Assembly (NCBI RefSeq): GCF_040938485.1
Contig: NW_027271376.1
Span: forward strand, 124,001 to 188,000
Length of the DNA: 64,000 bases
Reading direction: 5' to 3'
Source: Diadema antillarum
Taxonomy: Eukaryota
In this document: positions 401 to 47,786 of the stretch, piece by piece
How the letters are laid out: each line of letters opens with the position of its first letter
Numbering within the stretch: position 1 is the stretch's first letter
The notes under the pieces: generated by a model
Told to the model about the DNA's origin: nothing
Seen by the model: only the letters and a program-made list of their open reading frames with translations
Database searches by the model: none
Program-made: the position numbers and the translations under genes

Positions 401-503
401 ATATGAAGTAACACACAGAATTAATGCATGTAATTAGTACTAAATGCCATCAAATTAATTTTGGGTTTTCTCCTCACAGAAGTGATAGTTGTATGATACA
501 TAT

Positions 504-18200: not shown

Positions 18201-21200
18201 TGTTCCAATGTGCCAGCCTAGCAGTGACAGAGAGATTCTTTTAAACCATCCTGAGCCATTTTCTAACCCTTTTCAATCCTTCTTATTTGCATGAGTCATA
18301 AGATGGCCCCTAGAAAACTGTCAGTAAGAGAGATTGCCTCTTAGCCCCAGCAAAAAAAAAAAAAATGTTACCATGGTAATAAGGATAGGTATGTAGTGCA
18401 CAAATTATATTTGTCCTGAAAAAAAAAAATACAAATCTTGAATCTAAGTTATCACTACTGCATAATACCACATTTGAGAGATTCAAGTCATTTTTACATC
18501 ATGAAGTATATGCTGTGTTCACTCTGCTTATAAATAAGCTCCTGAGCAGATTAAAAGAAGTATCTAAAGGAAATATGTTTTGTTCCCAACAGTACTGTAT
18601 GATAATCACCTCTGTGTGTTTGGAGGCTTCAACCACACCATCGACACCCACTTCAACGACCTCCACAAGCTGGACCTGTCGTCGATGGAGTGGAAGAAGG
18701 TGGAGTGCAAGGGAAAGATTCCGTGCAAGAGACGTCGACAATGCTGCATTGTACATCGCGACAGGATGATCATGTTTGGAGGGACAAGGTGTGCATTTTG
18801 GACTAGACTATCTAACAAAGCCCCCTTCACTAGTTCAATGACATACCAATTATAGCTCTGATAGTGTGATACTCGATAAGACCAGACATTGTAATGGCAT
18901 TGAACATGAGAACATTTTTTTTTTTCTTTAAGGGGGGGGGGGGGGGAGTGGGTTAGGGGATTGTTTGTTTTGGGGTTGGATTTTTTTGGGGGGTGGATAG
19001 GGAGAGGGCAACATGGTAACATGCAATGAGGTAATTAAAAAAAAAGTCAACCACATTGTAGCTGTCCTTTCTGTCAAATGACAAGCATCAAATAAAGAAA
19101 AACCTGTAGAAAATGAATATTTGTGTGTTGTAAATTAGCCACTTAGGGATATGTGATCATATCAAGGGATAGATAGTTTGATTGGTAGAGGGAATGCCAT
19201 TTGGCTGTCTATCACAGAGAAATACTTTGTTTACCCCTGACTATTACTGAGTAAAACCTTATTCCCATGATAGTTCTAGCTTAAATTTTGGAGTGTAAAG
19301 GTTGTGATTGTGATCCTGAAAATGGATCATCCTATTTTAGTTCTCAAGACATTGTCGGATTTCTGCATTTGCTCTCTTTTTTTCGCTGCATTCTGATCAT
19401 TCCTCTTATGTTTTACTTACAATTTTTTTATTTGTGGGTGCGGCTGGATTGTTTTGTTGTCTCTGTGAAACAGAAGTTTGAGGCTGTGGTAACAAAGTCA
19501 AGAGCTTTTCTCACAGTGCATACTATCTTGTTGTCTCTGCCACAGCCCAAGGGAAAAGTACATCCCTGGAGGAAGTCCCGGGGAGAACCTGATTGACCTA
19601 GCAGATCTACACATCCTGGACTTTGGTAAGTGGGGAGCTATTTCTAAAGGGCTGCATACATTGTCTGGATAAGTTGGGGATGTTCAATTGCTGTGACTAG
19701 CCTCTTCCAATTATCACAGAATGTTGTTGTTTGTTTGCTTGCTTGTTTGTTTTTGAAGTACAATGTATGGTGTTTTGTCTGGCTGATTGCAGAAAGAATG
19801 GTAATTGACCTTATCTGTACTATTAGCCTAGAGCAATGAAATCAATTTATGTCTTGGATGGACAAAGTGTTGTATGAAAAAAAGGGGGTTATCATACCAG
19901 GTACCTATACAGGATGAGCACTCAAGGAGAAGATACAAAATATGTTCACAAGAATTTACTGAGCAAACACTGCATGACAGTGAAAGGTTTGTGTCGTGTT
20001 TGGTATATCCATCATCTATAGGTGATCCTTGGACTGAGTATTGCCCCAGACATTGTACCAAATATAGTTCTACGGAAATCGTAGGATGAGTGGGGCTGTT
20101 GGAGGGGTGCATTAAAGCCCCACACGATGCAGTCTTAAACACAGTGCCGATATTTCACACCCTGTAAGCCTCCTAAACCCAGCTCCCAACACATTCGAGT
20201 GGTGGCAACCACATTCAACGGTGATAGTAAACCACCATTATGCATTGTGGCAGAAAAGAGGAAGATAGAAAGCTGAATCCATGCCATGCTCAAGCTGTCT
20301 TGGATTTATGAGTAGCATAAGCGCCAGCAGGCAGAATGGCGTAAATTGAATTCAGATGAGAAAGATCTGTTGTATTGAAGTCGTGCATATTTTCATGAAG
20401 CAGGGATGTTGGTGGAAACCACCTATTCAATCTATGACAGGCAATGGTGTCTCCATTTCTCCACTCTCACAGTGGTGTGTACACATACCTCGGGGTATTC
20501 ACTTCAGAAAGCATGTGTTCTTTTGAAAGTTTGAACGATGATATAAATGAGGAAGAATGGTTTGCAGTTACACCATGTGTATGTAGGCCTCGACAGGACT
20601 GTTGTTTAGTGAATGAGGACCCTGGAAAGAGGAGAGTGGAGGAGGGAAGTGACATAGGGAGAGTGTATGGTAGGCAAAAAGTGACAATTGAGGAGCAGCA
20701 GTGAGCTGGAAGTTGACGTTACACTAGTAAAGATGGGAAAAGAGGAGACAGGGACAGTTGTAAGGAAGAATAGAGCATGTATTTGGTCAATAATTGAGCT
20801 GCTGCAGCCCACCCATCCTCAAAATTGATCTTTTCCGAATCATATGTGAAAGATCCCCATGATTTATTAAAGGAAGACAGAAAAAAAGGAAATTATGTGA
20901 AGTTTTTTTTTTAGAGACTGAGGTTAGTGTGAGACTTGGGGGACAAGTACTCTGATTATCACCTCACACATGTGGTTGCAACCTGTATAATTGTTTTTCA
21001 TGAAAACACATAAAACTTGAAATCCTATAACTTTCTCACTTCATACCTAAGGGCCAAATCTAAATAAACTTCCAACATTTCATTAATCAAACTTTACTAT
21101 TTTCATTAAAGTTAACTTGATTGTGGAGTGGCATTGATTGTGCTCTAATGATGCTGGTTTGAATGATTTGGGATGTTTCAATCTTTATTTTTTGTCCCCG

Positions 21201-27850: not shown

Positions 27851-28232
27851 TAATCGTGTGAACAGTTCTGGTTGAGGTGTGGATTTAGCTTTTAACGTTT
27901 TGCGAGATACAGGAAACCACTCTATGAGATGTCAAAGAGCATGCAATTCTGAGGGGTATCAAAAGTTTATTTGATGAAAATCGGTTTTGAAATGGCTGAG
28001 ATATCCAAAAAGAAGGTGAAACAAAGAGATCCTAATAAAAGGTGTGACCTGTCGCCTTTAATTATTATCAGTTTTTTGGATATCTCAGCCATTTGAAAAC
28101 CAATTTTCATCAACTAAACGTTGAATTCTTAGAATTACATGCTCTTTCATATTTCATAAGAGGTTTCTCATTATCTCACTTAGGAATGTTCAAAACATGA
28201 ATCCCCACCTCAACCAGTACTGTACAGTCCCT
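27851..28232. mobile_element. Second copy of the TTAA/AGGG Kolobok-like MITE family
   Basis: Collinear with 35177-35559 and ends CCAGTACTGTACAGTCCCT|TTAA; the left terminus is degenerate. Confidence 0.8.
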
Positions 28233-31200
28233 TTAAGTGTTGTTAAATACACAAAATGTGAACAATAGTTATGATAAGAATGTTTCCAGACTAAACCATC
28301 TACAGTTACGGTTTATTGGGAAAAACACTGATATCTCCTTATATTTTAGGCTTTATTGCGAAAATTTTATATGTAGGATGTTTTGTGATAGAACAGACTT
28401 ACACATATGCATCAAATGTATTATCTTGAACATTTTAGAAATCACTGCTCCCAAAGGTGAACTCTACCTTTAAACTCTGGTCAGATTCAAACATCATTGT
28501 AATGTGCCTCATGAAAACCAAAAGATCACCGTAGATCACCTGATGTCGGAAATATCAGCAAGAACCCAGTGATACTACTGATCTGCTGCTATTTAATTCA
28601 GGGTGGACTATTCTTGAATTTTTGAAATACATGTATTGTGTACCTGATATGTGGAAAATTGGATTTGTTGGTGTTCATTTCTTGTCCAGTCAGTATATGT
28701 GTACATCCAGATTTCATACAGTCTGCTGCATTGTTCCATTTTAATGGTAACTACAGTACTGATTATCAAGGCTGGTAACTTTTTAGAATACCCAAGTGAA
28801 GAAAGTGACTTCTGGTGTTTATTTTTTTTTTATTTATTTTTTTTTGTTTTTGTTTTGTTTTTGTTTTTTTGTTTTGTTTTTTTTTGCATGTTCATTGTTT
28901 TTAAATAGATATCACACTAAGATGTAGTGTACTTTGTAGTTTTTATGCACAGATTTCATTTATCATTTTACTTTTTCATTATTTCGAGATATTCAACACT
29001 CTTTTGGAGTGAAGCTGTGGTACTCCAGTTTCATGTTTTTGCTGTAAAGGGCAATTAATGTGTATATATGGAGTTTCTGTGTCAGAGAAGAACATTTGAC
29101 TTGGTGCTATATGAGTGTCTAATTTTAGCAGGACATCGATGCAAAGGGTTACCATCGAAAAAGGTCAGCTTATTTTTTTCCTATGCGTGGCAGAACGAGG
29201 AAGAAATATTGTGGCCTTCTGCTTTAACCTGATTGAGTTTCCCGAAACCAAATCACATGATAGTTATTTCTTTCCTGTTGCTTTTCCTTTCACTACTCCC
29301 CCCCCCCCCCCCCCCACTTTCCTTTTTTTTATCACATGGACAACAAAGTAGCTTCTTAGACTGATTTCTTCAGCCTATGGAGCATTAATGCAGACCCTTT
29401 AGTGGCTACAATGTTTATGGCTCATGTAGTAGTGACAGATATTTCTTATTCATGTATGCACATGTATTGGGATTCTGAAAAGCCAGTTTGTCATTAAGTT
29501 GTGGGAAGTTTTCATTTCTTTCTCTTTTTTTTTTTCAAGTTTGAATAGTGTGCAAAAAAAATGTTTGTTTCCATTCATGTTCATAACCGCATGAGAAGGT
29601 ATGGACTGTTTGTAATAAAGAATTGAAATAAAGTTGGCCTCCCATTGTTGTGGGGCACCGCAAATATGCCATGATAATAATGATAATTTTATTATTATTT
29701 GCGTCATACACATATTAAGCTAACATGCCATGGCCGTTCAGCATCTGAGGTGTTGTGATAGCCCAACATTCTGCATTCATTGCACCAATTTTGGGCAAAG
29801 TTTTCATATTCTCAAGGGGAAAAAGGGATTCAGGAAAAGCATATTCATTTATGTTTGAATGAAGACCCCCTGCCCTGTAGATTTGAGAAGTCTTACATTA
29901 GTCTATTAGAACAATCAAAAATTTTAAAAGTCCACAGAAGTTAGGTTTCTGTTATGTTCATGAAATAGTGGTATTGTATCGGCCATAATCACACTGATTT
30001 ATCTGATTTTGCTATATACAGTGTAAATCAAAGTGTATCATTACCCTAAAAATTTACTTCGTGACATGGAAAAGCACCTAAAGGGCATTGTCAATTTCTT
30101 CCATATAATTTTTTACCTGGCCCCTACAGAATTTATTCCTAACAGTTAAATGAACTTAGTAAATGCCCGTTTGGTGTGTGCATGTTGTCCTTGCGTGCAT
30201 CTCCTCATTGCACCTGTTACAAAATTATCTTAGCCATACAATTGCAACCATGAAAGCGCATACCATATGTCCATGTACATCGCATCTTACCTCGGTATCA
30301 GGGATTGCATAATTTATATGATGTGTGTATCGAATGCAATGGGGTTTACAATATACCTTCAGAATATGTGCTTTCATCATCATGCATAACTATCGCTGAC
30401 GCCATACACCGTATACATATGATAAAGCTGACAACATGCATAGCATATTGGTAATGTAACAGTGTGTGTATTTGATTTATTAGCATTGAATAGTGAGTGT
30501 GCCTGCCCCACGTTACAAAGATTCAAGATAGCATAATGAATGCGTGGGATAATACTACGAAGTCTGTTAGTGTTATGCAAAAACATGCCTGAACCCTCCC
30601 TTCACTGATTGGGCAAGTGTGTGGTAGACAACTACAGCTGGCCAAGCCATCCCGCACATACGTATACTACACACAAAAGAGTCACACAAAAATATCCAAT
30701 CTTTGCGATCAACCTCTATTGATGGTGTTTGTTGACTTAGCCTGAATTAAAGACATTTACACTTTTTTAGTGCAATTTGGAAGAATTCTTCTTATCATTA
30801 TTTCTACTAAGAGCTTCACACTCATATTCTAAGAAAACATTATTAGAATGACTCTTCCACGAGATAGACTGCAAAGACAGTAAAAAATACTGTTCCTAAT
30901 ATAACTACAGCAATTCTTGCTGAATGTGAGCTTGAGAGTGACTGAGGTGTTTCAGACTAAAAGAGAATGAAAGCCAAATACTGAGTACTACAGTGAATTG
31001 AAGGAATGCAGCAATATGACAATCTCTTCAAAAGTTTTAAAGCTTTGGTGCAGCCATTGCTGGATGAGAAAACTAAAACACTTTATGATGTCCCGCATGG
31101 AAATTGACAAAAACAAAATATACAGAAAACATATTTTCAACATACCATTTACATTTCAACATATTTTCAATTTCCTTGCATAATGAAAGAATACTTGACT

Positions 31201-32563: not shown

Positions 32564-35500
32564 TCATTCTTTGATAGTGGTATCAGCTGTCAAGTCCATG
32601 GCGAGTTCACTGTTAGCGACAGTCACTGTGACCTCGTGGTGACCAGCATCAATTACAAAGTTGCCTTGATCTTCATTTGCCTGATCAACTGCCTGATTGA
32701 TCAAGTTTCCAGAGGTGAGAACCTCCTGGTTGTAGAGGGACGGATCCAACGTGACGTAGGTGATGTTCTCCATGACATCATGATGGCCAATGATGCTACC
32801 CTCTGTGCCTGGCCCCAGAGTACTGGCAGCTACGATGTTTAAGTACCCCTCCGCATCTTTGAGGACTACCGTCTGGACTGTCTCATTGACAACGGTCATG
32901 TCGCCACCCTGTGTAGACGGTGTTGGTGCCTGAGAGTGAAGTCTGGCCTTCCCCTGTTGACCTGTGGTTTGTTGAGTATGTAGAGCAGCAACGTCTCCAC
33001 TACTACCCTGCACATCTCCTTGTGGTGGAGGCTCATTAGTACTGGATGCCGTAGGACGAGCTTTAGACACCCCACACTCTTGTGGGGACGTTTGAGTCCT
33101 GGATGATCTCTTGTCCTGTGATGAGCTTTGTGACATGGCTGTGAGATGATGTTCAACATTGGGGGCAGTGTTGCTCTCCACAGAGAGGACCCTGTTGCCA
33201 CTGATGTTATTGCCTTTGCTTGACACATCATTGCTGACTTGTGTTTGGTATAAGGATCCCTGGGTATCTTCCGTTCGTGTGGGACTTCCTGGACCAATTT
33301 GAACACCACCTTCCACGCTGCTACTGCCATTTACTTCCTTGACTTTTGGGGTCTCAGCATTATTCCTCCTGGCTCTAGAAGACCCCTGTGATCTTTTCTT
33401 AGTCCTATAGGTCACTCCTTCTGACAACTTCTCGAGCGAGTGCAACATATCGCAGAGGAATCTCTCATCTTTCACCAGTGAGACCTGAGAATGGAGCTTG
33501 TCAAGGAGGTCTTTGTTCTTGTTGATAAGTTGCCTGCACTTGGTGGCATTCCTCTTGGGTGTTGAAGATGCCTTTGTACTTTCTGGCTTGACCGAGTCAA
33601 GAGACTTTACAAGGTCGTCATCATCATCTCCTCCCGGAGGATGACGGTGGGAGTCACCGTCATGAAGGACATCATCATCCAAACAGAAGAGGGGATTGTC
33701 TCTGTAGGACTCACAAAGTTGGTCCCACGACCACCCCTCTACATGTCGGAAGATGGCACAAAAGTGTTTGCATGGCAGGAGACATCTAGACCAGTACGAG
33801 CATGAGCAAGACGGGAACTTGTCCTCACTGCCAAAGGAGACCCTGTGGGCCTGAGATTTGTCCCCTCTGACCAAGAACTGGCCGTTTTGTTCAGCCTGGA
33901 TTCCCTCCGCCTTGATACCAGAGGCCATGTTCTTTTCGATGTGCTCTACGATGAGTCTTGGTCTGCTGTGCAGGAAGGCAGGAACGGCTTCACTGTACTT
34001 GAGGTAGCTGCTAGAATAGCGAGCGTTGAATTCAACATACCTAGCATGTAGGAAAAAGGCAAGTGAAATAGATCAAACAGAGTGGGACAAGGTGAAATAC
34101 AGGAAAGAAATCATTTCAAAATAGTTGCACAAAATTGTAAGTTTTGCTTACATGAGGCAAATACTTGATGAAACTTGATAGATATGAACATTCTCTGATC
34201 AAAGATGCAGATCTTGTATGGAAGAAGAAGAAAAAAAAATCTATCTCACATCTGAAAAGATGATGACTTCATGAGTATGCGGAGAAATAATCATGAATCC
34301 ACATGACTTGGCCAGTAAAATGAGTGAACAATAATGCAATGTTTATATAAACCTTTTTACATAATATGGAAAGGTCAAGAATGACCTTCTGAATATTCAG
34401 ATGACATGGTTTAACCACAGGATGAGATACTATGTCTCTGCTTCTATCCTATCTCCTGTTGCCTTCTGGTTACTCTGTTCTTGTTCTTGCTCTTGTTGTT
34501 GTAGACAATGTTGTGTGACATAAATTTGTTCTGCATGACATGGACATATGCTTTGCAATACACTGCACTTCTGTTACGATGAATATGGTTATAACGAAAC
34601 TCTTGTTACAACAAAGCAAAAATTCAGGTCCCAAAATTATTGTCTATATATCGTTGTATACTTCACTGTTTGGTTATAACAAAATTTCAGTATAACAAAA
34701 GAAAACTGCTAGTCCTTAGGACTTCATTATAATGAGAGTCACCTAGAATCCAATTTTCCACTAGTATTTTTTTTTCTCAGCTCATATGCAAAGCCTTACA
34801 AGGAGTCTCAGCCAGAAAAGGGTTCCTGCCAGCCAGCATAACAGGATAACTTACACCTTCAGTAAACTACTCAAGATAGCACTAAAAGCCATTTTCAACA
34901 AGAAGACATCCTATTCACCTAGAGGGCATTAGTAATTGATGGAACTTGTTTTCATTGATTCAGCATTATCCATAGCAGAATGAGAATTGGAGATGACTTG
35001 ATCTCACTTTTGACATGAAGCACAATTATGATGCTGTAATCTCGCAGAGGAAATGTTGTACACATGGGGGTAGGGAGAACTGGAGACAGAGAAATACTAC
35101 AGTGGGAACTGGGAATAAAGAGAACCTTGGACAAGGAAAATTTGATCAATATCAGTTTTTTTTAAACTGAAGTTAAAGGGTGTGTACAGTTCTGGTCGAT
35201 GTGTAGATTTAGCTTTCAACATTTTGCGAGATATTCAGAAACCACTCTATGAGATGTCAAAGACAATGCAGTTCCAAGGGGTATCAAAAGTTTATTCGAT
35301 GAAAGTCGGTTTTGAAATGGCTGAGATATCCAAAAACAAGGTGAAACAAAGAGATCCTAATAAAGTTGGGGCATGTCGCCTTTTATTATTAGCACTTTTT
35401 GGGATATCTCAGCCATTTGAAAACCAATTTTCATCAAATAAACGTTGAATCCTTCTTAAAATTACATGCTCTTTCATATTTCATAAGAGGCTTTTCATTA

Positions 35501-38500
35501 TCTCACTTAGGAATGTTCAAAACATGAATCCTTACCTCAACCAGTACTGAACAGTCCCTTTAAATCTTAAAACAAAAAAATAAAGAATTTCTCTTTAAGA
35601 ACCCCCTGAAAATATCAGGTGTATAGCCCAACAAAAACTCTTTAGACCAAATTCTCTCAGGAGTTGAAAGGTAGAAATCATACGATCCTTACCTCCTGTA
35701 TGCAGCGGGAAAGTGCTTTGTGTAGAGGACTGTGATGACCTCACTCAAGCTACACTCCTTGTACTGGCTGATGTAGTCGCAGCGGAACATCTCGTCTTGC
35801 TGCCGAACGCCCTTGGCTGCATACAGGCTCACCCTGACACTCTCACTCTGAAAGGCAGCTGCCCATCTCTGGGGTTGCAACAAACAAATCAACAGTTATA
35901 CAGATGACAAAGAGAATGTAAGAACCACAGACATATTTTGCATATAAAAACAGAAAATGGTTTCTTATTATTTTGTTCAAGGCAAACTGCCCTTAAGCTC
36001 TTGCTAACAATGCACACATTTGCATCTTCCACTCACTGATTGATTCAAAATATGTTCACTATGATTACTTATAAACTATATACAGAATGTACTTTGCAGT
36101 GTTTTATATTCATGAATTTTGGGAGCCAAAAATATTCAGAAAGTAAGCAACTTGAAAAAATATTGCCTCCTATAACACAAATACATCATCATCATCACCT
36201 ACTAGCACCTGTGCTACCTCTTGGTTCTTTTAGCAACCTCATTGTATACAACATTGCCATATTGTAGCTCTTTTTTAGATTAATAGTTTTAGATTACATA
36301 ATCATTTATATTATAGATTATATTCAATATGTTTTGTTTAGATCGTTAACTACATGTAGTATGTATTAATATTGATGTATAAACATGTATTCAAACTTTC
36401 CTGTACATATGTTGTTGTTATAAATAAACTCAAACTCAAACTTCTAAAAAGTTGGATATTGCAAGCTTTTCTCTTAAGAAGTGATACATCATCTTTCCAT
36501 TCCGTCAATGTGGTTAATGATTGAGAATTCAACCGCTTGCGAAACTGTCTTGCAAGTCCCAATTCGCGATACCAGTAGGCCTACTTGCAAAACATATGCA
36601 GTATGCAGTAGTCGATCCATGTCTGTTCATCCATATTGATGTCTCTTTTTTATACATACTTTATACTTTATAGATACTTTATACATATTTACACATATGT
36701 ATGCTTTATACATAGATATCTATATATATATACATGTGTGTCTGTACCTTATACATATATACCTATAATGTTACATGTGAAGCGTTGTGGTGAAATCAAT
36801 CAGTTCAAGCATGAACTACATATAAATACGAAGAAATACATAGAACCACACTCAATCCAAACTCCTCCTCCAAGCAGACCTTTATCTATCATCTACCTTG
36901 GAACACGAGAGCCAGTAAGAGGAGAAATAATTTGCCACCAGTTCATTCTCTTTCCAGGTAAACATGGAGCGCAGAACCTTGAGGGCGGATGCATGTTCCC
37001 TGTGGGTTGGTGCCATGGCAACACGATGCATGGTCTTGATGATGCGGTTCCTTGTCACTGGGTTGACAACCTCAGAAGATGTCGCCAACCAATCTGTCCA
37101 CATCTTCTCACATCGGCTGACAGAGAATAGAGCAGTGCAGTCTGTGGAAGAGGAGTAATACTACTTTCAGCTCTTAAATGGCATTAGAGATACCCCCCCC
37201 CCATTATGATACAATCACATTACCACATGAGGCATAAAAAAGGTTGCTCCTAAATTACCATTATTCACAACATGATATGGCACCAATTGTACATGTACTT
37301 GGAAGTCAAGCCAGTTATACAAAGCAGTCTTCACGCATCAATAACCACCACACTTAACCAAATTTGTGAAATCCAAAAATCAATATTAAATATCAGTGAT
37401 TTTTATTTTCACTGGAAAATGTAAAGAAAGTGCCATGCCTCTCGACTTCGTCTCGGGGCATAGCACTGTTGAGAAATCACCTCCGTGCATATAGGTTTAC
37501 CATCTCCCTCTGAAGCAGTCGATATTTGTATACTATCCCCTCTCCTTCCCCTCCCTCTACAAAGAGAGAGAGAGAAAAAAAAAAAAAACGACATGAAAAA
37601 GAGAGAATACTTTACCTGGCAGAGCAGTTTTCACGGCCTCAATCTCTGGGTCAAAGTAGTCAACCAGAAAAGCGGCAGGTTTCCACATTGGATTCCATCG
37701 CATGAAGATGCGAAGGGCCTCAGCTATATCCTCCGCCGTGTCACTGTGGGACACAAAGAAGCCGACAACCACATAGCCAGCGTTGGTTCTGACTGACAGG
37801 AGGAAGAGGGGTAAGGGGTAGCCAGCACTCCGGTAGACTGCATCCAGCACTGTGACCGTTGTGCCATATTTGTTGAGGAGGCGCTGCTGCCAGCATGTCT
37901 GGCTGCAGAATAAGAATTTGCCTGATTCGGGTGCTGTTAGGAGCAGAATATAACATGAAAATGAAATAGATTTACCAATTATTCCATATAGCCAATACAT
38001 GCAAAGTCATGGAAAATTATGGTATCATCATTGGCAAAATTTACTCCTTCAACTTTGGGTTTGATAGAAAGATCTTTACGAAGTAAAAAAAGTCATACAA
38101 TCCAAGGAAACTTTACAGATTACAAGTTCATAAACTTCATACATTTCTGGGCCTTCAAAGCACCAGTTAAATCATTAACCCGCTGAGGGCAGACTGATTT
38201 TGCTACAACCTGCATTTCCCATATAGACCCCTGCCCGAGTATACTCGGGACTCGTCCTCAACGGGGTAACATATCCTGTGTCCATAGCAAACCAGTACCT
38301 GCTTTGAGTGGCCGGTACTCAAAGAAGTCACCATGGGCACTCTCCCATGACTTGACCAGCATGGACATGTTGCCTTGGTCCACCTTGGTGTGGATTTCCT
38401 TCTTGGCCTTCTGCACTGCATGCCGAATATCCACATCTGTCGGGTAATAGCGCCGCCGCGTCCTGTGCGGTTGCTCTGACGAGTGGAAGAGCTCGCTCTG

Positions 38501-41500
38501 CACGTACTCTTCCAGGTGTCGCCTGATTTCCGGCACCCGGACAATCCCCCTGGCGGTGAGCTCAACGATCTTGTGGAGAATCCTGGGGTCAACTGCTTCC
38601 CTGAGTCCTGCAGCCTAAGGCAGGATGGTATGGCATGTCAGCATGGGGGAGTTGCTAGTCATAGGTATTGTTAGTAATCCCTCACACTAACTTTTGATTA
38701 GGTATCCTAGAATAGTTGTAATACATCGCTTTGGATAGCAATCGATGGCAAACGTGTGTGCTTCATCAGGCCCCCAGGATGGCTATAATTTGGAAAAGAA
38801 AAATGGCATATGGCAGGTTGTAACTTTTTGGAGGGGGGCCTGAGGTTAAAACAAAGCATGCACATCTTACTGCTGAGTGTGCAACTGATTTACATGCATT
38901 GGTAGCTCATTTGCAATATATTACACCAAAACAATACTGTCTTTCCATCATCCCTGCTACATATTCCATATTGAAATATGATTTTCTTGATGCACGTTTG
39001 GTTGCAGCTTCCATCTCACAGATTCCAGAATGTATATGCCAATGAAAACTCTTGGTTTTCCCTTGAAGGACATGTATCCTAACAAAGAAAAGTCCCTAGA
39101 TGTAAGTGCTTTCTAAAAAGGCAGCAAGAAACTGACAATTTATTCTAGTCCCTGATGTGCCAGCTCACTAAATTTAAAAGAGTAACTCATGTCAGAGAGC
39201 AAGAATGTAGACCATCATCCAAATAAGTGAAAATACAACTTTTACATTTCCTCTCCTGATGGCACAATTAAAACAACAGAACAACTGGAAAAACAGCAAG
39301 CATGCAAATCAAAACATCCAACACTTGATTTCACCACTTGGCATAAGCCATGATATTGGAGGATCAAACTAAGTGGAACTGCATGCAACTTGGATATTCT
39401 GGTAGCAAAAAGCTGGGATATTCAGGCTGGTGTGACTCACAATGTTATTGACAGGATGCCCAACGTGTGAAGATAGTGGAGGAAGACTGACGTAGAAGAG
39501 GGTCTCTGTCTGGATGGAATCAGCCCCGAGTTCAAACTCCTCCCTCAGACGTTTCTTGGCCATCACACGGGAGTGTCCCGAAGGCACTGGTTCACTCACC
39601 TGACAATTACATTCATTCAAGGAGAATATTCTGCTGAATTTGGGTCATCACACTTACAGAGACTCCAATCCCAAACATCTCTCAAACTGGAGATTCTCCT
39701 GCCTGGAGCCCTCTAGCAAACTGGAGACTATGATCGCATGAACATGCGCAAGGCATCATATACATGAAGCATAATGTCCCTTGCATCCAGGGTCTAACTC
39801 TTGGGTTATGAATGCTTTCTGTCACTATCTTGAATTTAGCTTTAACATAAAGTTGGGCTGGATAAAGCTAACTTCTAAGCAAACAAAATACATTTTAAGT
39901 GGGAGATACACACTTATAGTGGGTGAAACTTAAGCAAGAGAGGGGGAGATTTTGCACAGATGGCCTCAGAGGGGAAGATTTTGGATGAAAGCGAGAGAGT
40001 TGGAGCCCTTGCAACAATATCATTTATGCTTACAAATCTGGGCGGAAATTATTACAAGAACACTATCAATGATTATTACCTATACGAGGGAGTTTTGCGA
40101 GGCGATTACAGTTGGTATTTTGCAGGGTCGGGAGTTCAGCAGGTGACATTAGAGCATATCACGAGCATCCGGGGTTTTACATCAACAGTGGACTCCTGTT
40201 ATAACGAAATCCTCGGGACCTGCAGTTTTCTTTCGTTATATCGGAATTTTATTATAACTGAACAAATAAACAATAGAAATACATAGAGTGGATGACATTG
40301 CAGCCCAAATTTTTACTTCGTTATAACCAGAATTTTGTTATAACCGTGTTCGTTATAATAGGAGTGCACTGTAAAACAGGGAGGTGGGAAGAGAAGGAGT
40401 GGAATCTCTCTTCCCACCTCCCTGCTTTACATGTAAACATTCCGATCGACCACGAAGAGAAAACATTCAAGGAGGTCACTGCGTGTCGATTACACGCACT
40501 GCAGAAGAACGCCGATAAATCAACTCATACAAGGTCGACCACTTCCAGCAGCACTGCGCGTCAAACAATGATTAGTCCATTTGTGCTCAATAACTGCACA
40601 GTGACCATCAGTTATTACAACTCTCCAAATTGAAACAGAAGCAAAAATAAAGTGTAAAAGCGTTCAGATGTTTGAAGTTTGCCTGTTACAACTATATATG
40701 TATCTTTGAAGTTGGAGTTGAATGATATAAATTGATGTTTTTCAATTATTCGACATCTTGGCGATAATCTACAGGTAGTCAAATGTGGCTTGATCTATAT
40801 CATAGTGTATAGCCGTATTCACATATTTTCCTAATTTACCTAGGGGATAGGTAATAATTATGATATTGACTGGCCTTGAGGGAGATACCAGAAAATATTC
40901 TTTCATATTATCGTCAATATTATATAACTATTCATGTTAGTGAGAATGAGAAGAGTATACAATACAAAGCGAATTCTTTAATGAAATGCAAATGTTTGCT
41001 GATATTGCAAAATTTCTGAGAATGCAATCTTTTTTGTTCAATCTACCTGAAAGTGATTAATAAAAGAGACCAAAAATCAAAATACTAGTACATAGAGAAG
41101 TGCACCAATAAGGAGAAAAAATTTTGAGAAGCTGTATCTGAAAAAATTTGTTGTCTAACTTTAGCAAAGTGCACAAAAGAGTACTATTCCACAAGTCAGA
41201 TATATCCTCCTCGAGCAGTACTGGGTATATTCCTTGTTAATGTGGAAAGACATCTGGAAAATATTGCTGAACTCTCTTCATGATTTTATGCTTACTTTCT
41301 TTGATCATATTGAGAAAAGTGTTAAAGAAGTAACCCTGAGGCTAATACAGTATATTGAGAAAAATGTGTGAATGTTAATTACCTCAATTCTATGTGTTGG
41401 AAATCTGAGGATCTGTACCACATATATGCTTGCAGGGCAGTCCATTTTCTTCGTATCTTGGACAAGTTTTCTCCTCTTCTTAGGAACTGCGTCATTTGAT

Positions 41501-44500
41501 GCATCTTCTGCCTTCATCGATCAATAACCATTTGAGGGGAAAAACAATATATGATCAATGAGTTACATGAACACACAAGACATAAAATGCTTTAGGGTTT
41601 GGTTACATGAGAAACATTTATAGATGATGACTGGCGGGGGAGGGAACATACCGAATGTTACACCCGAAGGGTTTGAAATGCTATTGAGGGAGGTTATAAG
41701 TCCCGAGACGAAGTCGAGGGACTTATTGCCTCCCGAAATAGCATTTCAAACCCTGAGGGTGGAACGTTTGGTACATGTTCCCGACAACAAAAGTCATCAT
41801 CTGTTATATTATATGAGTTAGTCAAATACATCAAATACGTCAACGTCAACCACCCAGCACAACGCGGTTAACGCCCTCGATCGCTCGCTCGCACAGAGCC
41901 AAATTCACTGTGCGCGCGCGATAGGCCTTCTGTCATTTGTTACGTGAAAATGTTTTCCCATGGGATTGTGAATGTTCGCCCATGGGCGAGCATTAAACGA
42001 ATGTACCTCCATCACGTGACTGTGTTTAGCCAATCACTAACCGGTATTTGACTAACCCATTTAATATAATTATTATAGAATTTGTATGTACAATGTATTT
42101 TAAAAGATGAATGCTACAATGTGCATAGATGGGAAAAATCTTGTGGAAGGTTTTTATATGTACACTGAACACATAGGTCTCTAGCTTCAGGCCATTTCAG
42201 AGACATGTCATCAAAACTAGCATCAAATCATGAAAACATTTTAATAATAACCTGATAGAGTCATACAAATGTGTATTACGTCATGTATGCATCATCATCT
42301 GAACATACACAGCGTACTAGCACCAGTAGTGGTGATATCAAAACCTGCCATGTCAGGATTCATTCAATACAACTGTAGGATTGCTGTAAAAAAAGAGGAA
42401 AGATTATAACATCTTTGCTTACCTTTCTCTTTGCTTTTGCCTTTTCATTGCGGTCTCTTCCCTGATGGCAGATATAGACATGGCGGTGCATGTAGAAGAA
42501 TGGAGTGCCATCACACTCAATCTTGGGTGATTGGCCTCCATAGTCTAGCCTCCATCGCAGGAAATTCTTGCCAGGGTCAGGAATAGATACTGAAGTAAGA
42601 AAATGGGTATTCAAATGAAGCATGAATACATTAGACTATATATTTCTGATAAAAATTAGTCCAGTTTTGATCAAGCTGGAGGGAAGTCGGCAAATGTGCT
42701 TATGGTTAACTGCACATTACTATTTGTTCTACAGACACTACAATAACATTTTGTAGCACAGCAACATTGCCTTTTTTAAGCAGCCATTGGCATTGGCATA
42801 GCAAAGCTCCAAGTCAAATTTAATCTAAAATTACAAATGACCTAACCTATACTAACGCTAAATTTGAATTTAAAACTGTCAAAAAGAGAGTTCATTCATG
42901 ATCACTACCATATATATGTGGTGAAAGGAATGGATATCGGAATCTGGGCATGCTATATAAATATGGTAGGTGATATATTATAAAGATATCGCATCACGAG
43001 TTACGGCACAACTTATGTTAGCTCTAACGAGTTTTACAAGCGAGGTGTTCGCCAATGAAACTCAATTGTCCACATACAACCAACGTTAATGGTGTTGACT
43101 AACAACAACTTTAACGAGTGGGACTGTATCAGGCCATTACCGTTGAGTAAAACGCACTGCTAACTAAGTTTGCAATTCTGCTGCAACAAGAGCATTCAGC
43201 ACTGACCTGTTGGTTTTCCAAAATCCTTATCTTTGTGGACTGTAATAAATTTCACTCTGTATCGCTCTTCGTGCTCTGAAATGCATTTGTACACGTCCTC
43301 GATACTGCGAAATTTCACAGTGATGCTCGACTTCGATGCCATGGTAGCGGCGGCCCAGGCATCCTGGCCTCTCGTCGAATGGTATCGCATCGCATGCATG
43401 CACATCGGGCATTCGCACCCGGACCCTCGACCCTGGGAGAATGATGATGATGATGCTGAGGAGATGGAGTTGAGAGCAGTTAAAATGAAGTCTGAAAAGA
43501 AAGAGTGCAATTTTATAGGCACAACAGTGAAAATTTTATCCAAATCAGATAAAGTTAGGGAAATATATGAAACTGTTAAGTTTCGCTAATTTTGTTACAC
43601 AGTTAAAACAGTAGATTTGAATATGTAAATAAAAAAAATGAGTGAATTGCTTCTTGGATTGTGTTAAAAAAAAAATGAAACCCGACGAAAATTTGATTTC
43701 CTGCTCTAAAAGTGTAAAACATGTTATACAATGACATACCCACTGACCTCTACTAGGCCAAAGTGGAGGTCAGTGTATACATGATACCTAGATGAATAAC
43801 GTCAAAATATTGATCAGTCAGATAATATTTATGTTACGATTTGAGACCGGGGCATAATTGCATTTGGACACAAACACACACACACAAACAAAATGAAATT
43901 TCAAAATTTTGTGTACAATCAATGGCTGGATTTGAGGCGGCGATTACATAATCAACTCATACACTGCAATTTGCATACCGCTTCTTGAATTAATAATGAT
44001 AATAGGCTGTATACATGTAAAGTCTTAAACACGACAAGACAAAAACACTTCCTGGATCCCTGTGTTCCTGTATTATAGATCATGTCATCATAGTTATATT
44101 TCATCGATGAGAAAGAGAACAAGAGAACTAGGCCTACATATATGATCTCTACAAATAGCACTGCCAAGAGAAAGTGGGTTGCAATTTATTTTCACACCCC
44201 TTCTACGCCAGATTGATTCGGAATTAATCATTATGGTTGTATTTGCAGAGCTGTTGCACCATTAGCACCGTCTGTTTTTTGACAGGCCAAACTATAGGTC
44301 TACCTATCACCACGGTCGCCGTGGTGGAGTTTGACGAGTATATTACGATGTTTTCCTGGGCTTCTGTTCCAATAAAATCGGAATATATGCTCTGCAGGCC
44401 CGTGTAGTTTCATGTGGAAAATAGCACAAGAACACTGCAAATTATAATCTCTCTTCAACATGAATAACTCAATTATCAATCAATCCCACTGATAAGTTAT

Positions 44501-45204
44501 TGAAGAGAAAATATTGACATAACATGATGCCAAACATATATCTCTTAAATATTAGATCATATAACTCATACTCCACTTATAAGAGCATAGACATAAAAAC
44601 GAACTAAAAATACAATATACAAATCTAGAATGAAATAATTTACAAAAACCCAACCAGCCCTTTTTCAATTTCAATTTCAATTCAATTCAATTCAAATGAT
44701 TTTATTTCCGTATAAAATCTTCCAACCAAAATAAATATTCATCTATCCTAGATATCTAATCTAACTATCCTTCTTCAAATCAAATCCCAATCCCACCAAC
44801 CCCCAAGTCACCAATCGCAGAAACACACCTACACCCACATCCACCAACCCACATACACACCACACCACCCCCCTTTCACACACACACACACACACACACA
44901 CATTACAAAGTGGGGTAGGCACATTGATAAAGTTTTCATGGTATAAGTACAAGTTACTGTAAGTAGGTTAACTTCAAATGAGGTTAGCACGTTGCTCGGC
45001 GAAAATCAATTGATGCAGTTATATCTCAATCATTTCATTTCATTTCATGTTATTAATAGTCAAAAATTCAAACAACGCCAACAGATTCACATCTGATTAA
45101 CTTAATAGAGACATTTTTGTCTATGTGGAAAAAATATACGTCTACATAGACATATTTGTTTTGATCCTTTTGTCATTTGGAGCTCAGGGTAAATATTTAC
45201 CCAT
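32564..45204 (-). CDS. Domesticated Mutator-like (MULE) transposase-derived protein: CaRF-like DNA-binding region + degenerate MULE DDE domain + SWIM zinc finger + low-complexity tail, about 1040-1091 aa
   Basis: Minus-strand exons: (45204-45201 with 43491-43207, or starting at ATG 43342), 42589-42423, 41511-41383, 39599-39441, 38614-38299, 37933-37616, 37141-36897, 35868-35693, 34040-32564. All are AG/GT bounded, phases chain without stops, and the total is 3123 nt from ATG 43342. CaRF-like motifs: DGTPF..YICHQGRDR, KKMDCPASIYVVQILRFP, FYVSLP..H..H, ILHKIVEL..RG, YYPTDVDIRHAV. MULE motifs: VLDAVY, LPLFLLSVRTNAGY, FLVDY..EIEAV. SWIM: CSCSYWSRCLLPCKH at 33808-33764. The start codon and the 41511 acceptor (weak pyrimidine tract) are the least certain parts. 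Confidence 0.88.
35177..35559. mobile_element. TTAA-flanked MITE with AGGG...CCCT termini (Kolobok-like); further copies at about 27851-28232 and 2795-3142 (inverted, truncated)
   Basis: TTAA|AGGGTGTGTACAGTTCTGG ... CCAGTACTGAACAGTCCCT|TTAA. An internal inverted repeat (TTTTGAAATGGCTGAGATATCCAAAAA) is shared with the other two copies. Confidence 0.85.
38179..38265. mobile_element. Inverted copy of the short piggyBac-like MITE, in an intron of the MULE-derived gene
   Basis: TTAA|CCCGCTGAGG...CCCGAGTATACTCGGGACTCGTCCTCAACGGG|GTAA. Confidence 0.8.
40186..40371. mobile_element. Short Tc1/mariner-like MITE with TATAAC repeats; degenerate relative at about 34561-34744
   Basis: CAGTGGACTCCTGTTATAACGAA ... 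TTCGTTATAATAGGAGTGCACTG|TA. Confidence 0.8.
41622..42075. mobile_element. Unclassified repeat with a fold-back of about 190 bp centred on GAC-GAA-GTC; shorter relative at about 37430-37470
   Basis: AGATGATGACT...TATAAGTCCC GAGACGAAGTCGA GGGACTTAT...AGTCATCATCT (41622-41812), followed by a CpG-rich segment. CTCGACTTCGTCTCGG at 37441-37456 is the reverse complement of the same core. Confidence 0.65.
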
Positions 45205-46850
45205 CTGCTCCAAGAGTGCCTCGGCATATGGAACGAATCCATCATTACTAATCGATTCTTCATTGGACTAAACAGAAGACAATTATCGATGGCCTCAGTC
45301 TGCAAATAGGCGGAGAAAGAGTGCAGGGAGGAAGGTGTGAAATCTGCCATGATTAAAAAATGACAAAATGTATTTGCTCTAGACTAGTGAAAGGAATAAG
45401 GGCAGGGGTGAAGGTACATCTCTAACTTAGTCGCACCGGGTGTGTGATTTAAGTATACCGCTGCCATGAAAATTATTATCAATAGTTTCACCGAGCTCAG
45501 TGGTATGATGGACTCAGAACTGGCAGAGTTTCAGAAAGGAAGAGAAACGCATAGTTTGACGTGGTTGACAATGTCTGTTTTCAAAGTGTGGATTTACCTT
45601 GGATTGTTTGTTGCCTCGACCACAATATCGACTTGGATATTTTCAGGTAAATTGCGGAGCTACTCTAAATCGTATACTGGCTTATTATACATAATTTCAA
45701 TTTAGCCATTCCTTTAAGATTTATCCAAATTATTCTTTAAATGAAAATTAGACAAAAGGGTCTTTGTCCAACAAATCCTACAGTGAATGACAATGTTGAA
45801 TAATAATGTCGACTTTACATAAGTGACACTTTTGAAAACGCACTTGTTCTTGATCACAAACGAATTCACTCTGCTTGGTTTTATCCATTACTCCAATAAT
45901 GGTCATCCAAAAGGAAAATTATAATAGATAATTAGTGATATTAATTATCAATTATAATTTTCCTTATAATGGCTAATGATGCTTCAAGTTGTCGTAATAA
46001 CATAGTCATGAGTGTAGTGCGGGTTTGTTGCTGTTGGTTTTTTTTTACTACTTGAGATTACACGAGATACTATAATATATTTCTGCAAAGCTTTATTTTG
46101 TCTTTTAGAAAATGATCATGAATTGAACACTTCTTCAACAAAGTTTAAATGACCGTGTACCAACCATATCATGTAACTGATGCTTAAGATTTGCCGTTAA
46201 ATCTCGGGCACCTGAGATTATTCCTTGTATCTTTTAAGCCATAAAATTTATATAGAAACGCATGTTGCTGAGGAATTTATCTAAACATATTTCCACTATC
46301 GACAATCATGCCACTATCTTGCAGTATACCTGAAGAGTTGAATGGTTCTTCTTTATGTTTTTGTTCTTGTTTTTTCTCCAAAATAGAGCGTTTCTATTCA
46401 AGGGGCGTGGTTTTTCAGAGAGCTTCGGTCTACAATGACAACCAATTGGAAAGCAGACAGTTACCCCAAGGGATCAGGGGCAGCCATGCGTCACACACAA
46501 TCATTGAAGACAAAATATTGTCATCTTATCAGGTGAACTTATGTGAATATGACTGCTTATAATGATTCTCCTACACTTGCTCAGGGTGCCCCCCCCCCCC
46601 CTTCGAAACGCGATGACAATAATTATGACGACAATGTTCACAATACTAATTATAATAGTTCCGAATATAGTCACAATTTTACTCTCACACATATACCGCA
46701 ATAACGAATAGTTCGCGAGATTTATAGTTCACAATACTTCTAATCTGACACATTTCAGTGTTCATTTCTGTTTGCTTGTAAGTCCTTACGATTGTGAGGA
46801 GACGTCTATAGACTTTTTGTTTACTTTTATTTTGTCTTGAAAATCTGCTT

Positions 46851-47786
46851 ATGAACTCTGCAACAATTACTGTTTCGTGTCGCATTGGATGCGTAACATT
46901 AGTGTCCATTATTGTACTCGCACAGCTAATGAGGCGACGCACGATATCCCAGGGCTGTTTGACAATGAGGATGCGGCCAGATTATCATCTCTACAACCAC
47001 CTGGGGGCAAAGGTCATCTCATCACTCAACCACATCATCGTTCTCGACGACCTGAAATTGATGTTCTGCTGCATCCCACACACCGGCTGTAACTACTGGA
47101 AACACCTCTTTCAATCGTACCGCCTAGATGAACGAGGAGATGTTGAAAGGCAGGCAACAGGGAGAGTGTCGGACATTCGATTGCTGAGCCAGTACGGGAT
47201 TGGAGAGGTTAAACAGAGACTCCTAAACTACTCGTCATTTATCTTCACGCGAAATCCGTTTCACAGACTACTCTCGGCATTCATAACTTCTTTCCGACTA
47301 GACCGCGGCGGTGACGACAAGGAGGAAGTTCGGAGAATTTACAAATCTAAGATTGAAAGGAAATCTGAGTCAGGCGATAGGGCAGCTATAACAAACAAGA
47401 CCTTGGATGCTATATCATTCCCGGAATTTATAGATTTCATATCGCAATCACACAACAAATTCCACAAGAGTGACGAGGCGAACTGGTTGGGAATGTACCA
47501 ACTCTGTCACCTATGTGGCATCGATTATGATTTCGTTGGGAAATACGAAACTTTTGCCGACGATTCGAAAGAGGCTTTCGAGAAATTTGGTCTCCCTGGA
47601 GTGGTCAACGAGTCGGAGATCGAGAGAGAGGAGGAAGACATTAGCGATGTCACCTTACGTCATTATTTCTCTCAACTAAACCCTTACCAGATCGGAAATT
47701 TCACGAAGCGCTTTGTGGCAGATAAGATTTTGTTCGGATACATGACTCCAGATGTAGTCATGCAATATCTGACAGATAGGCATTGA
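46851..47786 (+). CDS. Carbohydrate sulfotransferase-like protein (HNK-1/CHST8-14, Sulfotransfer_2 family), single coding exon, 311 aa
   Basis: Uninterrupted 311-aa ORF. It has an N-terminal hydrophobic type II anchor (IGCVTLVSIIVLAQL), a 5'-PSB-like FCCIPHTGCNYWK, a 3'-PB FTRNPFHRLLSAF, and LCHLCGIDYDFVGKYETF plus D.ILFGY, all typical of this family. Confidence 0.88.
   Translation: MNSATITVSCRIGCVTLVSIIVLAQLMRRRTISQGCLTMRMRPDYHLYNHLGAKVISSLNHIIVLDDLKLMFCCIPHTGCNYWKHLFQSYRLDERGDVERQATGRVSDIRLLSQYGIGEVKQRLLNYSSFIFTRNPFHRLLSAFITSFRLDRGGDDKEEVRRIYKSKIERKSESGDRAAITNKTLDAISFPEFIDFISQSHNKFHKSDEANWLGMYQLCHLCGIDYDFVGKYETFADDSKEAFEKFGLPGVVNESEIEREEEDISDVTLRHYFSQLNPYQIGNFTKRFVADKILFGYMTPDVVMQYLTDRH

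What the first reader, a model, noticed from the sequence alone, without database searches (positions are those of the whole stretch)
32564..45204. Intron-rich domesticated Mutator transposase: CaRF-like DNA-binding region + MULE fold + SWIM finger in one host gene
Seen: 9-10 phase-consistent exons over 12.6 kb encode an intact ORF of over 1000 aa. I found no TIRs or TSD around it, and its introns have accumulated unrelated MITEs. Established: vertebrate CaRF is a transcription factor, and MULE transposases have an N-terminal DNA-binding domain, a DDE core and often a SWIM finger. Here a CaRF-like region (KKMDCPASIYV..ILRFP, FYVSLP..H..H, ILHKIVEL..RG..EIRRHLEEYVQSELF, YYPTDVDIRHAV) is still attached to the whole transposase body. 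Inference: this is an independently domesticated host transcription or chromatin factor that keeps the ancestral architecture from which CaRF-type proteins may derive. I do not recognise it as a named gene.
Basis: partly seen in the sequence, partly recalled or inferred. Interest (0 to 1): 0.82.

Follow-up and report, generated by a model that had tools for sequence, protein, structure and literature searches.

The report
Urchin gene tamed from Mutator transposase
This is a real, intact sea-urchin (Diadema) gene that descends from a Mutator-type jumping-gene enzyme, has lost key catalytic residues, has stayed at one chromosomal place in three urchin species under strong selection, and carries the same DNA-binding domain as the vertebrate factor CaRF, so it most likely now works as a DNA-binding regulator.

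Summary
Confirmed. On the minus strand, 9 GT-AG exons (CDS 43342-32564) encode an intact protein of 1040/1044 aa. It is the NCBI model 'uncharacterized protein [Diadema antillarum]'. Domains: full-length Pfam ALS2CR8 (the CaRF domain, E 1.4e-37), a MULE/IS256-type RNase H-like core, an intact SWIM finger, and a long S/T-rich tail.

It is a host gene, not a mobile copy:
- No TIR or TSD flanks it.
- The only near-identical copy is an allelic haplotig.
- D. setosum and Lytechinus carry it beside the same Kelch gene with the same 9 exons.
- dN/dS is 0.19 overall and 0.04 in the core.
- D337 and D398 are kept, but the family's C, H and E are S419, R422 and R516.

Two corrections. The domain architecture is not special to this gene: it is standard for a metazoan MULE clade, including an amphioxus element with 73-bp TIRs, a 9-bp TSD and intact DDE. 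That element shares six intron positions with this gene, so the introns came from the transposon. The stretch 43343-45204 has no support.

I could not obtain a vertebrate CaRF sequence, so the link to CaRF origin stays an inference. The scan noted a similar gene on another piece of this genome (s1-215026).

The parts
32564..43342 (-). Coding span of the gene: 9 exons, 1040 aa (1044 aa with the alternative donor of exon 2)
   Evidence: Model built. Identical to public protein P0001 except for VSKD. Exact spliced mapping.
43207..43342 (-). Exon 1: start codon in an ACCATGG context, N-terminal beta-alpha-beta unit (aa 1-45), donor in phase 1
   Evidence: The haplotig model starts 66 nt upstream at an in-frame ATG.
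42423..42589 (-). Exon 2: first half of the zinc-finger sheet, with C86 at 42468-42470. An alternative donor at 42411 adds 4 aa.
41383..41511 (-). Exon 3: basic PKKRRK motif, read as an NLS (41467-41484), and the KKMDCPA strand with invariant C130 (41437-41439)
39441..39599 (-). Exon 4: last strand of the finger and the H193-x-x-H196 zinc ligands (39456-39467)
38299..38614 (-). Exon 5: helical HTH-like half of ALS2CR8 (aa 205-295), including the RRRYYPT motif
   Evidence: Pfam 49.8 bits on this exon alone. VIA-align matches to homeodomain/HTH and transposase DNA-binding domains at Z 4.4-5.0.
37616..37933 (-). Exon 6: RNase H-like core strands 1-4, with D337 (37842-37844) and D398 (37659-37661) kept
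36897..37141 (-). Exon 7: strand 5 and the degenerate CxxH site. The family motif LLCDFHREKAW reads LFSVSRCEKMW here (S419, R422; 37113-37124).
35693..35868 (-). Exon 8: the helix that carries the catalytic E in relatives. NNGVERQNE reads AKGVRQQDE here (R516; 35803-35805).
32564..34040 (-). Exon 9: end of the core, the SWIM finger CxC..CxH (aa 631-645; 33764-33808), a conserved helix at aa 721-760, a poorly conserved S/T-rich linker, a conserved C-terminal block of about 80 aa, and the stop codon
35173..35563 (.). Palindromic MITE-like repeat in intron 8. Copies lie at 2798-3149 and 27859-28236. It is not part of the gene's ancestry.
   Evidence: (I1)
41622..41802 (.). Palindromic MITE-like repeat in intron 2
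   Evidence: I3, I8

Best explanation
The gene is a domesticated Mutator-like (MULE) transposase of echinoids. It comes from a metazoan MULE clade whose transposase already had about 8 introns and this layout: an N-terminal WRKY-GCM1-type zinc finger plus a helix-turn-helix (together Pfam ALS2CR8, the CaRF DNA-binding domain), an IS256/MULE RNase H-like core, and a SWIM finger. The copy became fixed beside a Kelch gene before Diadema and Lytechinus split, and it lost its TIRs and the catalytic H and E.

Shown: the anatomy, immobility, conserved synteny, purifying selection, and loss of catalytic residues.

Inferred: the protein enters the nucleus (PKKRRK motif) and binds specific DNA through the finger and HTH. 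The dead but very strongly conserved core and SWIM finger would serve for oligomerisation or partner binding. The S/T-rich tail would serve for regulation or activation. On this reading it is a transcription or chromatin factor working like plant FHY3/FAR1.
For: - Intact 9-exon ORF, identical to an independent public model.
- ALS2CR8 at 130 bits over the whole profile.
- N-terminal model (pLDDT 83): the best PDB match is Aft2-DNA (Z 6.4, 75 residues, rmsd 2.7), and WRKY33 and WRKY1 also match. Residues 205-295 resemble HTH/homeodomain and transposase DNA-binding domains.
- Atlas shape and feature matches go to FAR1+MULE, AFT+MULE, HTH_FAR1 and chordate 'calcium-responsive transcription factor-like' clusters.
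- Core model (pLDDT 87, pTM 0.85): it matches ISCth4 (IS256) transposase at E 1.6e-6 and plant FRS proteins at TM 0.72-0.76 over 350-370 residues.
- Of the 22 non-orthologous relatives aligned, 17 keep D, D, C, H and E. All three urchin orthologs have H to R and E to R/K.
- dN/dS against D. setosum is 0.190 (CI 0.14-0.25) overall, 0.037 in the core and SWIM, and 0.17 in the DNA-binding part, with dS 0.155.
- The same neighbours and the same 9 exons occur in D. setosum and L. variegatus.
- The only close copy is collinear at 97.4% over 24.5 kb, which marks it as a haplotig.
- No TIR, whereas amphioxus relative L004 has 73-bp TIRs and the 9-bp TSD ACTTGGCCC.
Against: - There is no expression evidence. 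No RNA run was listed, so splice junctions rest on GT-AG rules, phase, and agreement among annotated models of three species.
- DNA binding, nuclear location and a transcriptional role are inferred from folds and motifs only. The structural Z scores of 4-6.4 for the N-terminal part are modest.
- Two of the three acidic residues remain, so residual metal binding cannot be excluded.
- Orthologs outside echinoids were not searched.
Confidence: 0.8

Rival explanations
1. It is the echinoid ortholog of vertebrate CaRF itself. On this view one ancient domestication happened in a deuterostome ancestor, and vertebrate CaRF later lost or degraded the transposase body.
For: - The ALS2CR8 domain is shared over its full length.
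- A chordate 'calcium-responsive transcription factor-like' cluster is among the nearest by shape and by features.
- Pfenning 2010 (PMC2877716) reports a second conserved CaRF region (mouse aa 292-472) of unknown function just after the DNA-binding domain, which is where the MULE core would sit.
Against: - No vertebrate CaRF sequence could be fetched, so no tree or alignment tests this.
- The chordate CaRF-like clusters carry ALS2CR8 only and did not appear among the nearest shapes of the core model.
- The urchin clade has no supported sister.
- Mobile members of the clade exist, so separate captures are easy to imagine.
Confidence: 0.12
2. It is a domesticated but still catalytic nuclease or recombinase, as with RAG1, PiggyMac or Kat1, that uses D337, D398 and a substitute acidic residue.
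For: - Both aspartates are kept.
- The core is the most constrained part (dN/dS 0.037).
- D520 and E521 lie one helical turn after the lost E.
Against: - The family's near-invariant H and E are replaced by arginine or lysine in all three urchin orthologs.
- Diadema has also lost the C.
- Positive charges at the metal site argue against catalysis.
Confidence: 0.05
3. It is still the transposase gene of a mobile or recently mobile non-TIR MULE.
For: Relatives are mobile: the amphioxus element has TIRs and a TSD, and an identical 993-aa protein sits at 10 loci in a frog.
Against: - It is single copy at a conserved syntenic place in three species.
- No TIR.
- H and E are lost.
- Purifying selection acts between species.
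Confidence: 0.02

Closest known systems
Plant FHY3 / FAR1 / FRS proteins (MULE-derived transcription factors)
   Same: The layout matches: a WRKY-GCM1/FAR1-type zinc finger followed by an HTH, then a MULE RNase H-like core, then SWIM. The core plus SWIM model superposes on FRS clusters at TM 0.72-0.76 over 350-370 residues. The N-terminal model matches FAR1+MULE clusters, and HTH_FAR1 is a lead by features. Both are immobile host genes derived from MULEs (abstracts of PMC13306707 and PMC6000157).
   Different: This gene is from animals, not plants. The DNA-binding part matches Pfam ALS2CR8, not Pfam FAR1. It has a 360-aa S/T-rich tail. It is a separate domestication event. Its function is untested.
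Vertebrate CaRF (CARF / ALS2CR8), calcium-response factor
   Same: The ALS2CR8 domain is shared over the whole Pfam profile (E 1.4e-37). A basic NLS-like motif lies inside the domain. CaRF binds DNA directly through this region (PMC2877716).
   Different: Chordate CaRF-like clusters show ALS2CR8 only, without MULE or SWIM. Orthology was not tested. CaRF was described as having a unique DNA-binding domain with no family.
Autonomous ALS2CR8-MULE transposons, e.g. the Branchiostoma floridae element in L004 (2825-19165)
   Same: Same domain order. Six of its seven intron positions match in phase and lie within 4 alignment columns. About 31% identity over the whole protein.
   Different: The amphioxus element has 73-bp TIRs, a 9-bp TSD and intact D, D, C, H and E. 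The urchin gene has none of these marks of mobility.
Vertebrate ZSWIM1 / ZSWIM3
   Same: The core matches Pfam ZSWIM1-3_RNaseH-like, and a SWIM finger follows.
   Different: No match to ZSWIM3_N or the DUF5575 domains. The N-terminus is ALS2CR8 instead.
Teleost genes annotated 'si:dkey-31c13.1', and the COPS9-adjacent gene of Betta and Monopterus
   Same: ALS2CR8 + MULE + SWIM with 35-42% identity. The Betta gene shares 7 of 8 intron positions.
   Different: There is no supported sister relation to the urchin clade. Most keep intact catalytic residues. The Betta and Monopterus genes add a PHD finger, and Betta has lost D1 instead. All are uncharacterised; no paper mentions them.

Membership tests
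Pfam ALS2CR8 / CaRF-domain proteins | Match to PF15299 above the gathering score over most of the profile | tested here: met
   130.3 bits against a cut-off of 28.9; residues 51-274 cover profile positions 5-234 of 235
Pfam ALS2CR8 / CaRF-domain proteins | Orthology to vertebrate CARF (tree position, synteny) | not testable with these tools
   No vertebrate CARF sequence was returned by any search. The protein labelled 'CARF [B. lanceolatum]' is a MULE-family fragment.
MULE / Mutator transposase (active element) | IS256/MULE-type RNase H-like fold | tested here: met
   Foldseek match to ISCth4 transposase at E 1.6e-6, probability 1.00. PF21056 at 29.6 bits against a cut-off of 27.2.
MULE / Mutator transposase (active element) | Complete D-D-E triad plus the conserved C/H after strand 5 | tested here: not met
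   D337 and D398 are kept; the C, H and E positions are S419, R422 and R516. Of the 22 non-orthologous relatives aligned, 17 keep all five.
MULE / Mutator transposase (active element) | Terminal inverted repeats and a 9-bp target-site duplication | tested here: not met
   No spanning inverted repeat. The flank-against-flank score of 22 is about the shuffle maximum of 21. Positive control: the amphioxus relative has 73-bp TIRs and a 9-bp TSD.
MULE / Mutator transposase (active element) | Multiple dispersed copies | tested here: not met
   The 90% cluster holds only an allelic haplotig and the D. setosum ortholog. Unannotated genomic copies could not be searched.
SWIM zinc finger | CxCx(n)CxH signature | tested here: met
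   C631, C633, C643 and H645 are present and aligned with near-invariant family columns. The Pfam SWIM score of 17.3 is below the cut-off of 19.6.
WRKY-GCM1 fold DNA-binding domains (the type with an insert, found in MULE transposases; Babu 2006) | Four-stranded sheet with C..C..H-x-x-H zinc ligands | tested here: inconclusive
   C86, C130, H193 and H196 are conserved. The top PDB match is Aft2-DNA at Z 6.4, with WRKY33 at 4.9 and WRKY1 at 4.3. These Z values are below the level at which the tool's own note allows confidence. Foldseek found nothing.
Domesticated transposase (host gene) | Orthologs at a conserved place, purifying selection, loss of mobility | tested here: met
FHY3/FAR1 family | Pfam FAR1 DNA-binding domain; plant lineage | tested here: not met
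   No PF03101 match. The resemblance is in fold and layout only.

The most novel reading that the evidence does not exclude
The 'orphan' DNA-binding domain of the vertebrate neuronal factor CaRF is the WRKY-GCM1 finger plus HTH module of an intron-bearing metazoan Mutator clade. On this reading CaRF is a transposase-derived factor, and its conserved region of unknown function after the DNA-binding domain may be a remnant of the RNase H-like core. This urchin gene would then be a full-length, catalytically dead living counterpart: an animal FHY3/FAR1. In the library searched, no paper links CaRF or ALS2CR8 to transposases.
Probability: 0.5. Interest if true: 0.65.

Novelty: new member of a known kind. 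Interest (0 to 1): 0.55.

Why it matters
Domesticated MULE transposases are well-studied regulators in plants (FHY3/FAR1, MUSTANG), but they are hardly described in animals. This gene is a clean animal case. It has a mobile relative for comparison, with TIRs, a TSD and the same introns.

It also gives a testable origin for the CaRF DNA-binding domain. That domain was published as unique and without a family (PMC2877716). If the link holds, CaRF's DNA recognition can be read through WRKY-GCM1/FAR1 structural knowledge, and the urchin gene offers a tractable embryo system for asking what a dead transposase core does in a regulator.

The conserved 8-intron structure of a mobile DNA transposon gene across phyla is unusual. 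It warns against using intron richness as a sign of domestication.

Tried and rejected
- RNA evidence: the look-up of sequencing runs listed no run.
- Vertebrate CaRF sequence: three word-index homolog searches and the representative search returned none. P0060, named 'CARF [B. lanceolatum]', proved to be a MULE-family fragment whose best relatives carry MULE and SWIM.
- PDB by sequence: nothing below E 0.4.
- Foldseek against PDB with the N-terminal model: nothing. Only VIA-align gave the WRKY-GCM1 lead.
- Hits of exon 5 to P0003, P0014 and P0088 (an Olduvai/NBPF-like protein): these are highly repetitive proteins whose scores sum many weak stretches. I judged them artefacts.
- dN/dS of Diadema against Lytechinus: dS is saturated, so the comparison is unusable.
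- The ORF at 45105-45383 as a first exon: it is not in any annotated model and not needed, so I rejected it.
- 1:1 orthology with fish si:dkey-31c13.1: not supported by the tree.
- L. pictus protein P0151 is not on record for a locus look-up. I used L. variegatus P0177 instead.
- DNA of the frog copies could not be fetched.
Full report
OBSERVATION.
The minus strand of 32564-43342 holds nine open segments that join through GT..AG introns with consistent phases. Together they form a 3123-nt CDS of 1040 aa, ending at the stop codon 32564-32566.

An exhaustive protein search with exon 5 returned a 1044-aa public protein at 100% identity (P0001). It equals my model except for an alternative donor of exon 2 that adds VSKD. 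NCBI lists it as 'uncharacterized protein [Diadema antillarum]' on contig JBFRCO010000488.1. The D. setosum model uses the same exon 2 donor as mine.

Nothing supports coding sequence between 43343 and 45204.

DOMAINS AND FOLDS.
Pfam finds ALS2CR8 over residues 51-274. This covers profile positions 5-234 of 235, at 130 bits and E 1.4e-37. ZSWIM1-3_RNaseH-like is above its cut-off. MULE and SWIM match below their cut-offs.

An AlphaFold model of residues 1-310 reached pLDDT 83. Its best solved match is the Aft2-DNA complex (Z 6.4, 75 residues, rmsd 2.7, model residues 5-198). WRKY33 (Z 4.9) and AtWRKY1 (Z 4.3) follow. Residues 205-295 resemble homeodomain/HTH domains and transposase DNA-binding domains (TnsB, IstA, HNF1) at Z 4.4-5.0. 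These Z values are modest and Foldseek found nothing, but several lines agree with them:
- The putative ligands C86, C130 and H193-x-x-H196 are conserved.
- Babu et al. 2006 (PMC1702500) describe an insert-containing WRKY-GCM1 finger at the N-terminus of MULE transposases. They include a subfamily of animal MULEs with two residues between the histidines, and sea-urchin and Ciona members with a C-terminal PHD finger.
- Atlas matches go to FAR1+MULE, AFT+MULE and HTH_FAR1 clusters.

The model of residues 300-690 reached pLDDT 87 and pTM 0.85. It matches the IS256-family ISCth4 transposase at E 1.6e-6. It also matches plant FAR1-RELATED SEQUENCE clusters at TM 0.72-0.76 over 350-370 residues.

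The SWIM signature C631-x-C633...C643-x-H645 is intact.

The last 360 residues are S/T-rich. Between Diadema and Lytechinus they are poorly conserved, except for a helix at 721-760 and the final block of about 80 residues.

THE FAMILY.
Long relatives found with exon 5 and later searches mostly carry ALS2CR8 + MULE/RNase H-like + SWIM. Some add PHD or Ulp1 protease domains. They come from amphioxus, teleosts, frogs, a hemichordate, a nemertean, crustaceans, a tick and cnidarians. A sponge protein was also among the exon-5 hits, but its domains were not scanned. The architecture is therefore the norm for a metazoan MULE clade, not a peculiarity of this gene.

At least one member is a bona fide transposon. 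In Branchiostoma floridae locus L004, 73-nt inverted repeats (96% complementary) at 2825-2897 and 19093-19165 enclose the gene. They are flanked by a perfect 9-bp direct repeat, ACTTGGCCC. The encoded protein keeps D, D, C, H and E.

In the frog Phyllobates terribilis, one identical 993-aa protein is encoded at 10 loci. The gene span is 21.68 kb at each of the four places shown, which points to recent amplification.

INTRONS.
I mapped the proteins exactly onto their loci and projected the intron positions onto one alignment.
- The Diadema gene, a second Lytechinus paralog, the Betta gene and the amphioxus transposon share intron positions and phases.
- Four positions fall in exactly the same column in all four genes (alignment columns 233, 482, 564 and 622).
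- Two more lie within 4 columns in the same phase.

The intron-rich structure was therefore inherited from the mobile ancestor. It is not evidence of domestication.

EVIDENCE FOR DOMESTICATION.
(a) Place. D. setosum has the ortholog between a Sulfotransfer_2 gene and the same 385-aa Kelch gene. Its DNA is collinear with the window at 78-92% identity. L. variegatus has the ortholog beside the same Kelch gene. All three have the same nine exons and phases.

(b) Copy number. The 90% identity cluster holds only P0001, the D. setosum ortholog and one more D. antillarum protein. The locus of that last protein is collinear with the window at 97.4% over 24.5 kb, introns and flanks included, and differs by a few insertions. 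It is an allelic haplotig.

(c) Ends. No inverted repeat spans the gene. The best inverted alignment of the flanks scores no better than shuffled sequence.

(d) Selection. Nei-Gojobori dN/dS between the two Diadema species (dS 0.155):

| Region | dN/dS | Bootstrap CI |
|---|---|---|
| Whole protein | 0.190 | 0.14-0.25 |
| Residues 1-306 | 0.166 | 0.08-0.32 |
| Residues 307-680 | 0.037 | 0.007-0.08 |
| Tail (681-end) | 0.372 | 0.24-0.58 |

(e) Active site. The family consensus is LLDATYRT / FMVDF / LLCDFHREKAW / NNGVERQNE.
- Diadema has D337 and D398 but S419, R422 and R516.
- Lytechinus keeps the C but has R at the H position and K at the E position.
- Of the 22 non-orthologous relatives aligned, 17 keep all five residues.
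- H and E were thus lost before the two urchin lineages split. From my own knowledge that split is of the order of 200 million years or more; saturated dS is consistent with this.

PHYLOGENY.
In a maximum-likelihood tree of 32 family members, the three urchin orthologs form a fully supported clade on a long stem (1.17 changes per column) with no supported sister. The Lytechinus paralog and the Betta/Monopterus gene are separate long branches. The fish genes labelled si:dkey-31c13.1 group with amphioxus and multi-copy fish members on short branches. This fits separate domestications out of a mobile pool, but the backbone is unresolved.

MECHANISM.
Shown: a conserved bipartite DNA-binding-type module containing a basic PKKRRK motif, a conserved but catalytically crippled RNase H-like core, an intact SWIM finger, and immobility.

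Inferred: the protein is a nuclear, sequence-specific DNA-binding factor. Its dead core and SWIM finger, the most constrained part, would mediate oligomerisation or partner contacts. From established knowledge, this is how the core and SWIM of FHY3/FAR1 serve dimerisation and activation. The tail would act as a regulatory or activation region.

Alternatives are given under the rival explanations: residual catalysis, true CaRF orthology, and continued mobility.

RELATION TO CaRF.
Pfenning et al. 2010 (PMC2877716) state that CaRF belongs to no known DNA-binding family. They also report a second conserved region (mouse aa 292-472) of unknown function after the DNA-binding domain.

In the library searched, no paper holds ALS2CR8 together with transposase. 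The two papers that hold ALS2CR8 with any 'transpos-' word were seen by title and abstract only. None holds CaRF with Mutator and domesticated, or CaRF with WRKY-GCM1.

My data show that the ALS2CR8 domain is the standard N-terminal module of a MULE clade. Because WRKY-GCM1 fingers are typical of MULEs, descent from transposon to host is the more economical direction.

The chordate CaRF-like clusters seen in the Atlas carry ALS2CR8 only and did not match the core model. The claim about CaRF's origin therefore remains an inference.

EARLIER NOTES OF THE SCAN.
Note s1-220838, on this window, says D and D are kept while CxxH and E are lost. I confirm this. Note s1-215026 reports a similar intact CaRF-like/MULE/SWIM gene on another piece of this genome, read in the same way. 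It may be the haplotig or the Diadema counterpart of the Lytechinus paralog; I did not resolve which.

VERDICT.
This is a new, uncharacterised member of a known kind (a domesticated MULE transposase). Its added value is a possible explanation of where the CaRF DNA-binding domain comes from, and it gives a matched pair of mobile and domesticated relatives.

Noticed in passing
L004:2825-19165 (Branchiostoma floridae, CM022894.1): A complete 16.3-kb MULE transposon. It has 73-nt TIRs (96% complementary) and a perfect 9-bp TSD, ACTTGGCCC. It carries an 8-exon ALS2CR8-MULE-SWIM gene with intact D, D, C, H and E. An N run begins 24 bp beyond the right end of the element and was left as it is.
   Followed up: yes
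Phyllobates terribilis GCA_046119375.1 (no DNA retrievable): One identical 993-aa ALS2CR8-MULE-SWIM-Ulp1-PHD protein is encoded at 10 loci. The gene span is 21.68 kb at each of the four places shown. This suggests very recent amplification of a large intron-bearing element.
   Followed up: partly
L003:10001-21476 (Lytechinus variegatus LOC121431720): A second intron-rich urchin paralog (896 aa, 8 exons) on its own long branch, with C replaced by S and E replaced by D. It may be another domestication. A Diadema counterpart may be what scan note s1-215026 describes.
   Followed up: partly
L002:10001-14568 (Betta splendens) and Monopterus P0173: A fish family member beside COPS9/MYEOV2 with an added C-terminal PHD finger. 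The Betta protein has lost the first catalytic D (G instead). In Monopterus it is annotated as a COPS9 isoform, probably a read-through model.
   Followed up: partly
window 42411-42422: Alternative donor of exon 2. The D. antillarum model includes 12 more bases (VSKD) than the D. setosum model and my model.
   Followed up: yes
window 43343-43408: An in-frame upstream ATG, 66 nt before the conserved start, is used by the haplotig's annotated model (1066 aa). The conserved start is the ACCATGG at 43342.
   Followed up: partly
window 46851-47786 (+): A 311-aa ORF of the Sulfotransfer_2 family (E 3.9e-31). It is also the neighbour of the gene in D. setosum.
   Followed up: yes
window 61331-62330 (-): Two exons of an ATP:guanido phosphotransferase (arginine/creatine kinase type) gene.
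   Followed up: partly
   Followed up: yes
L007:18258-19008 against window 500-1178: The two haplotypes differ by insertions in the introns that resemble repeats elsewhere in the window.
   Followed up: no
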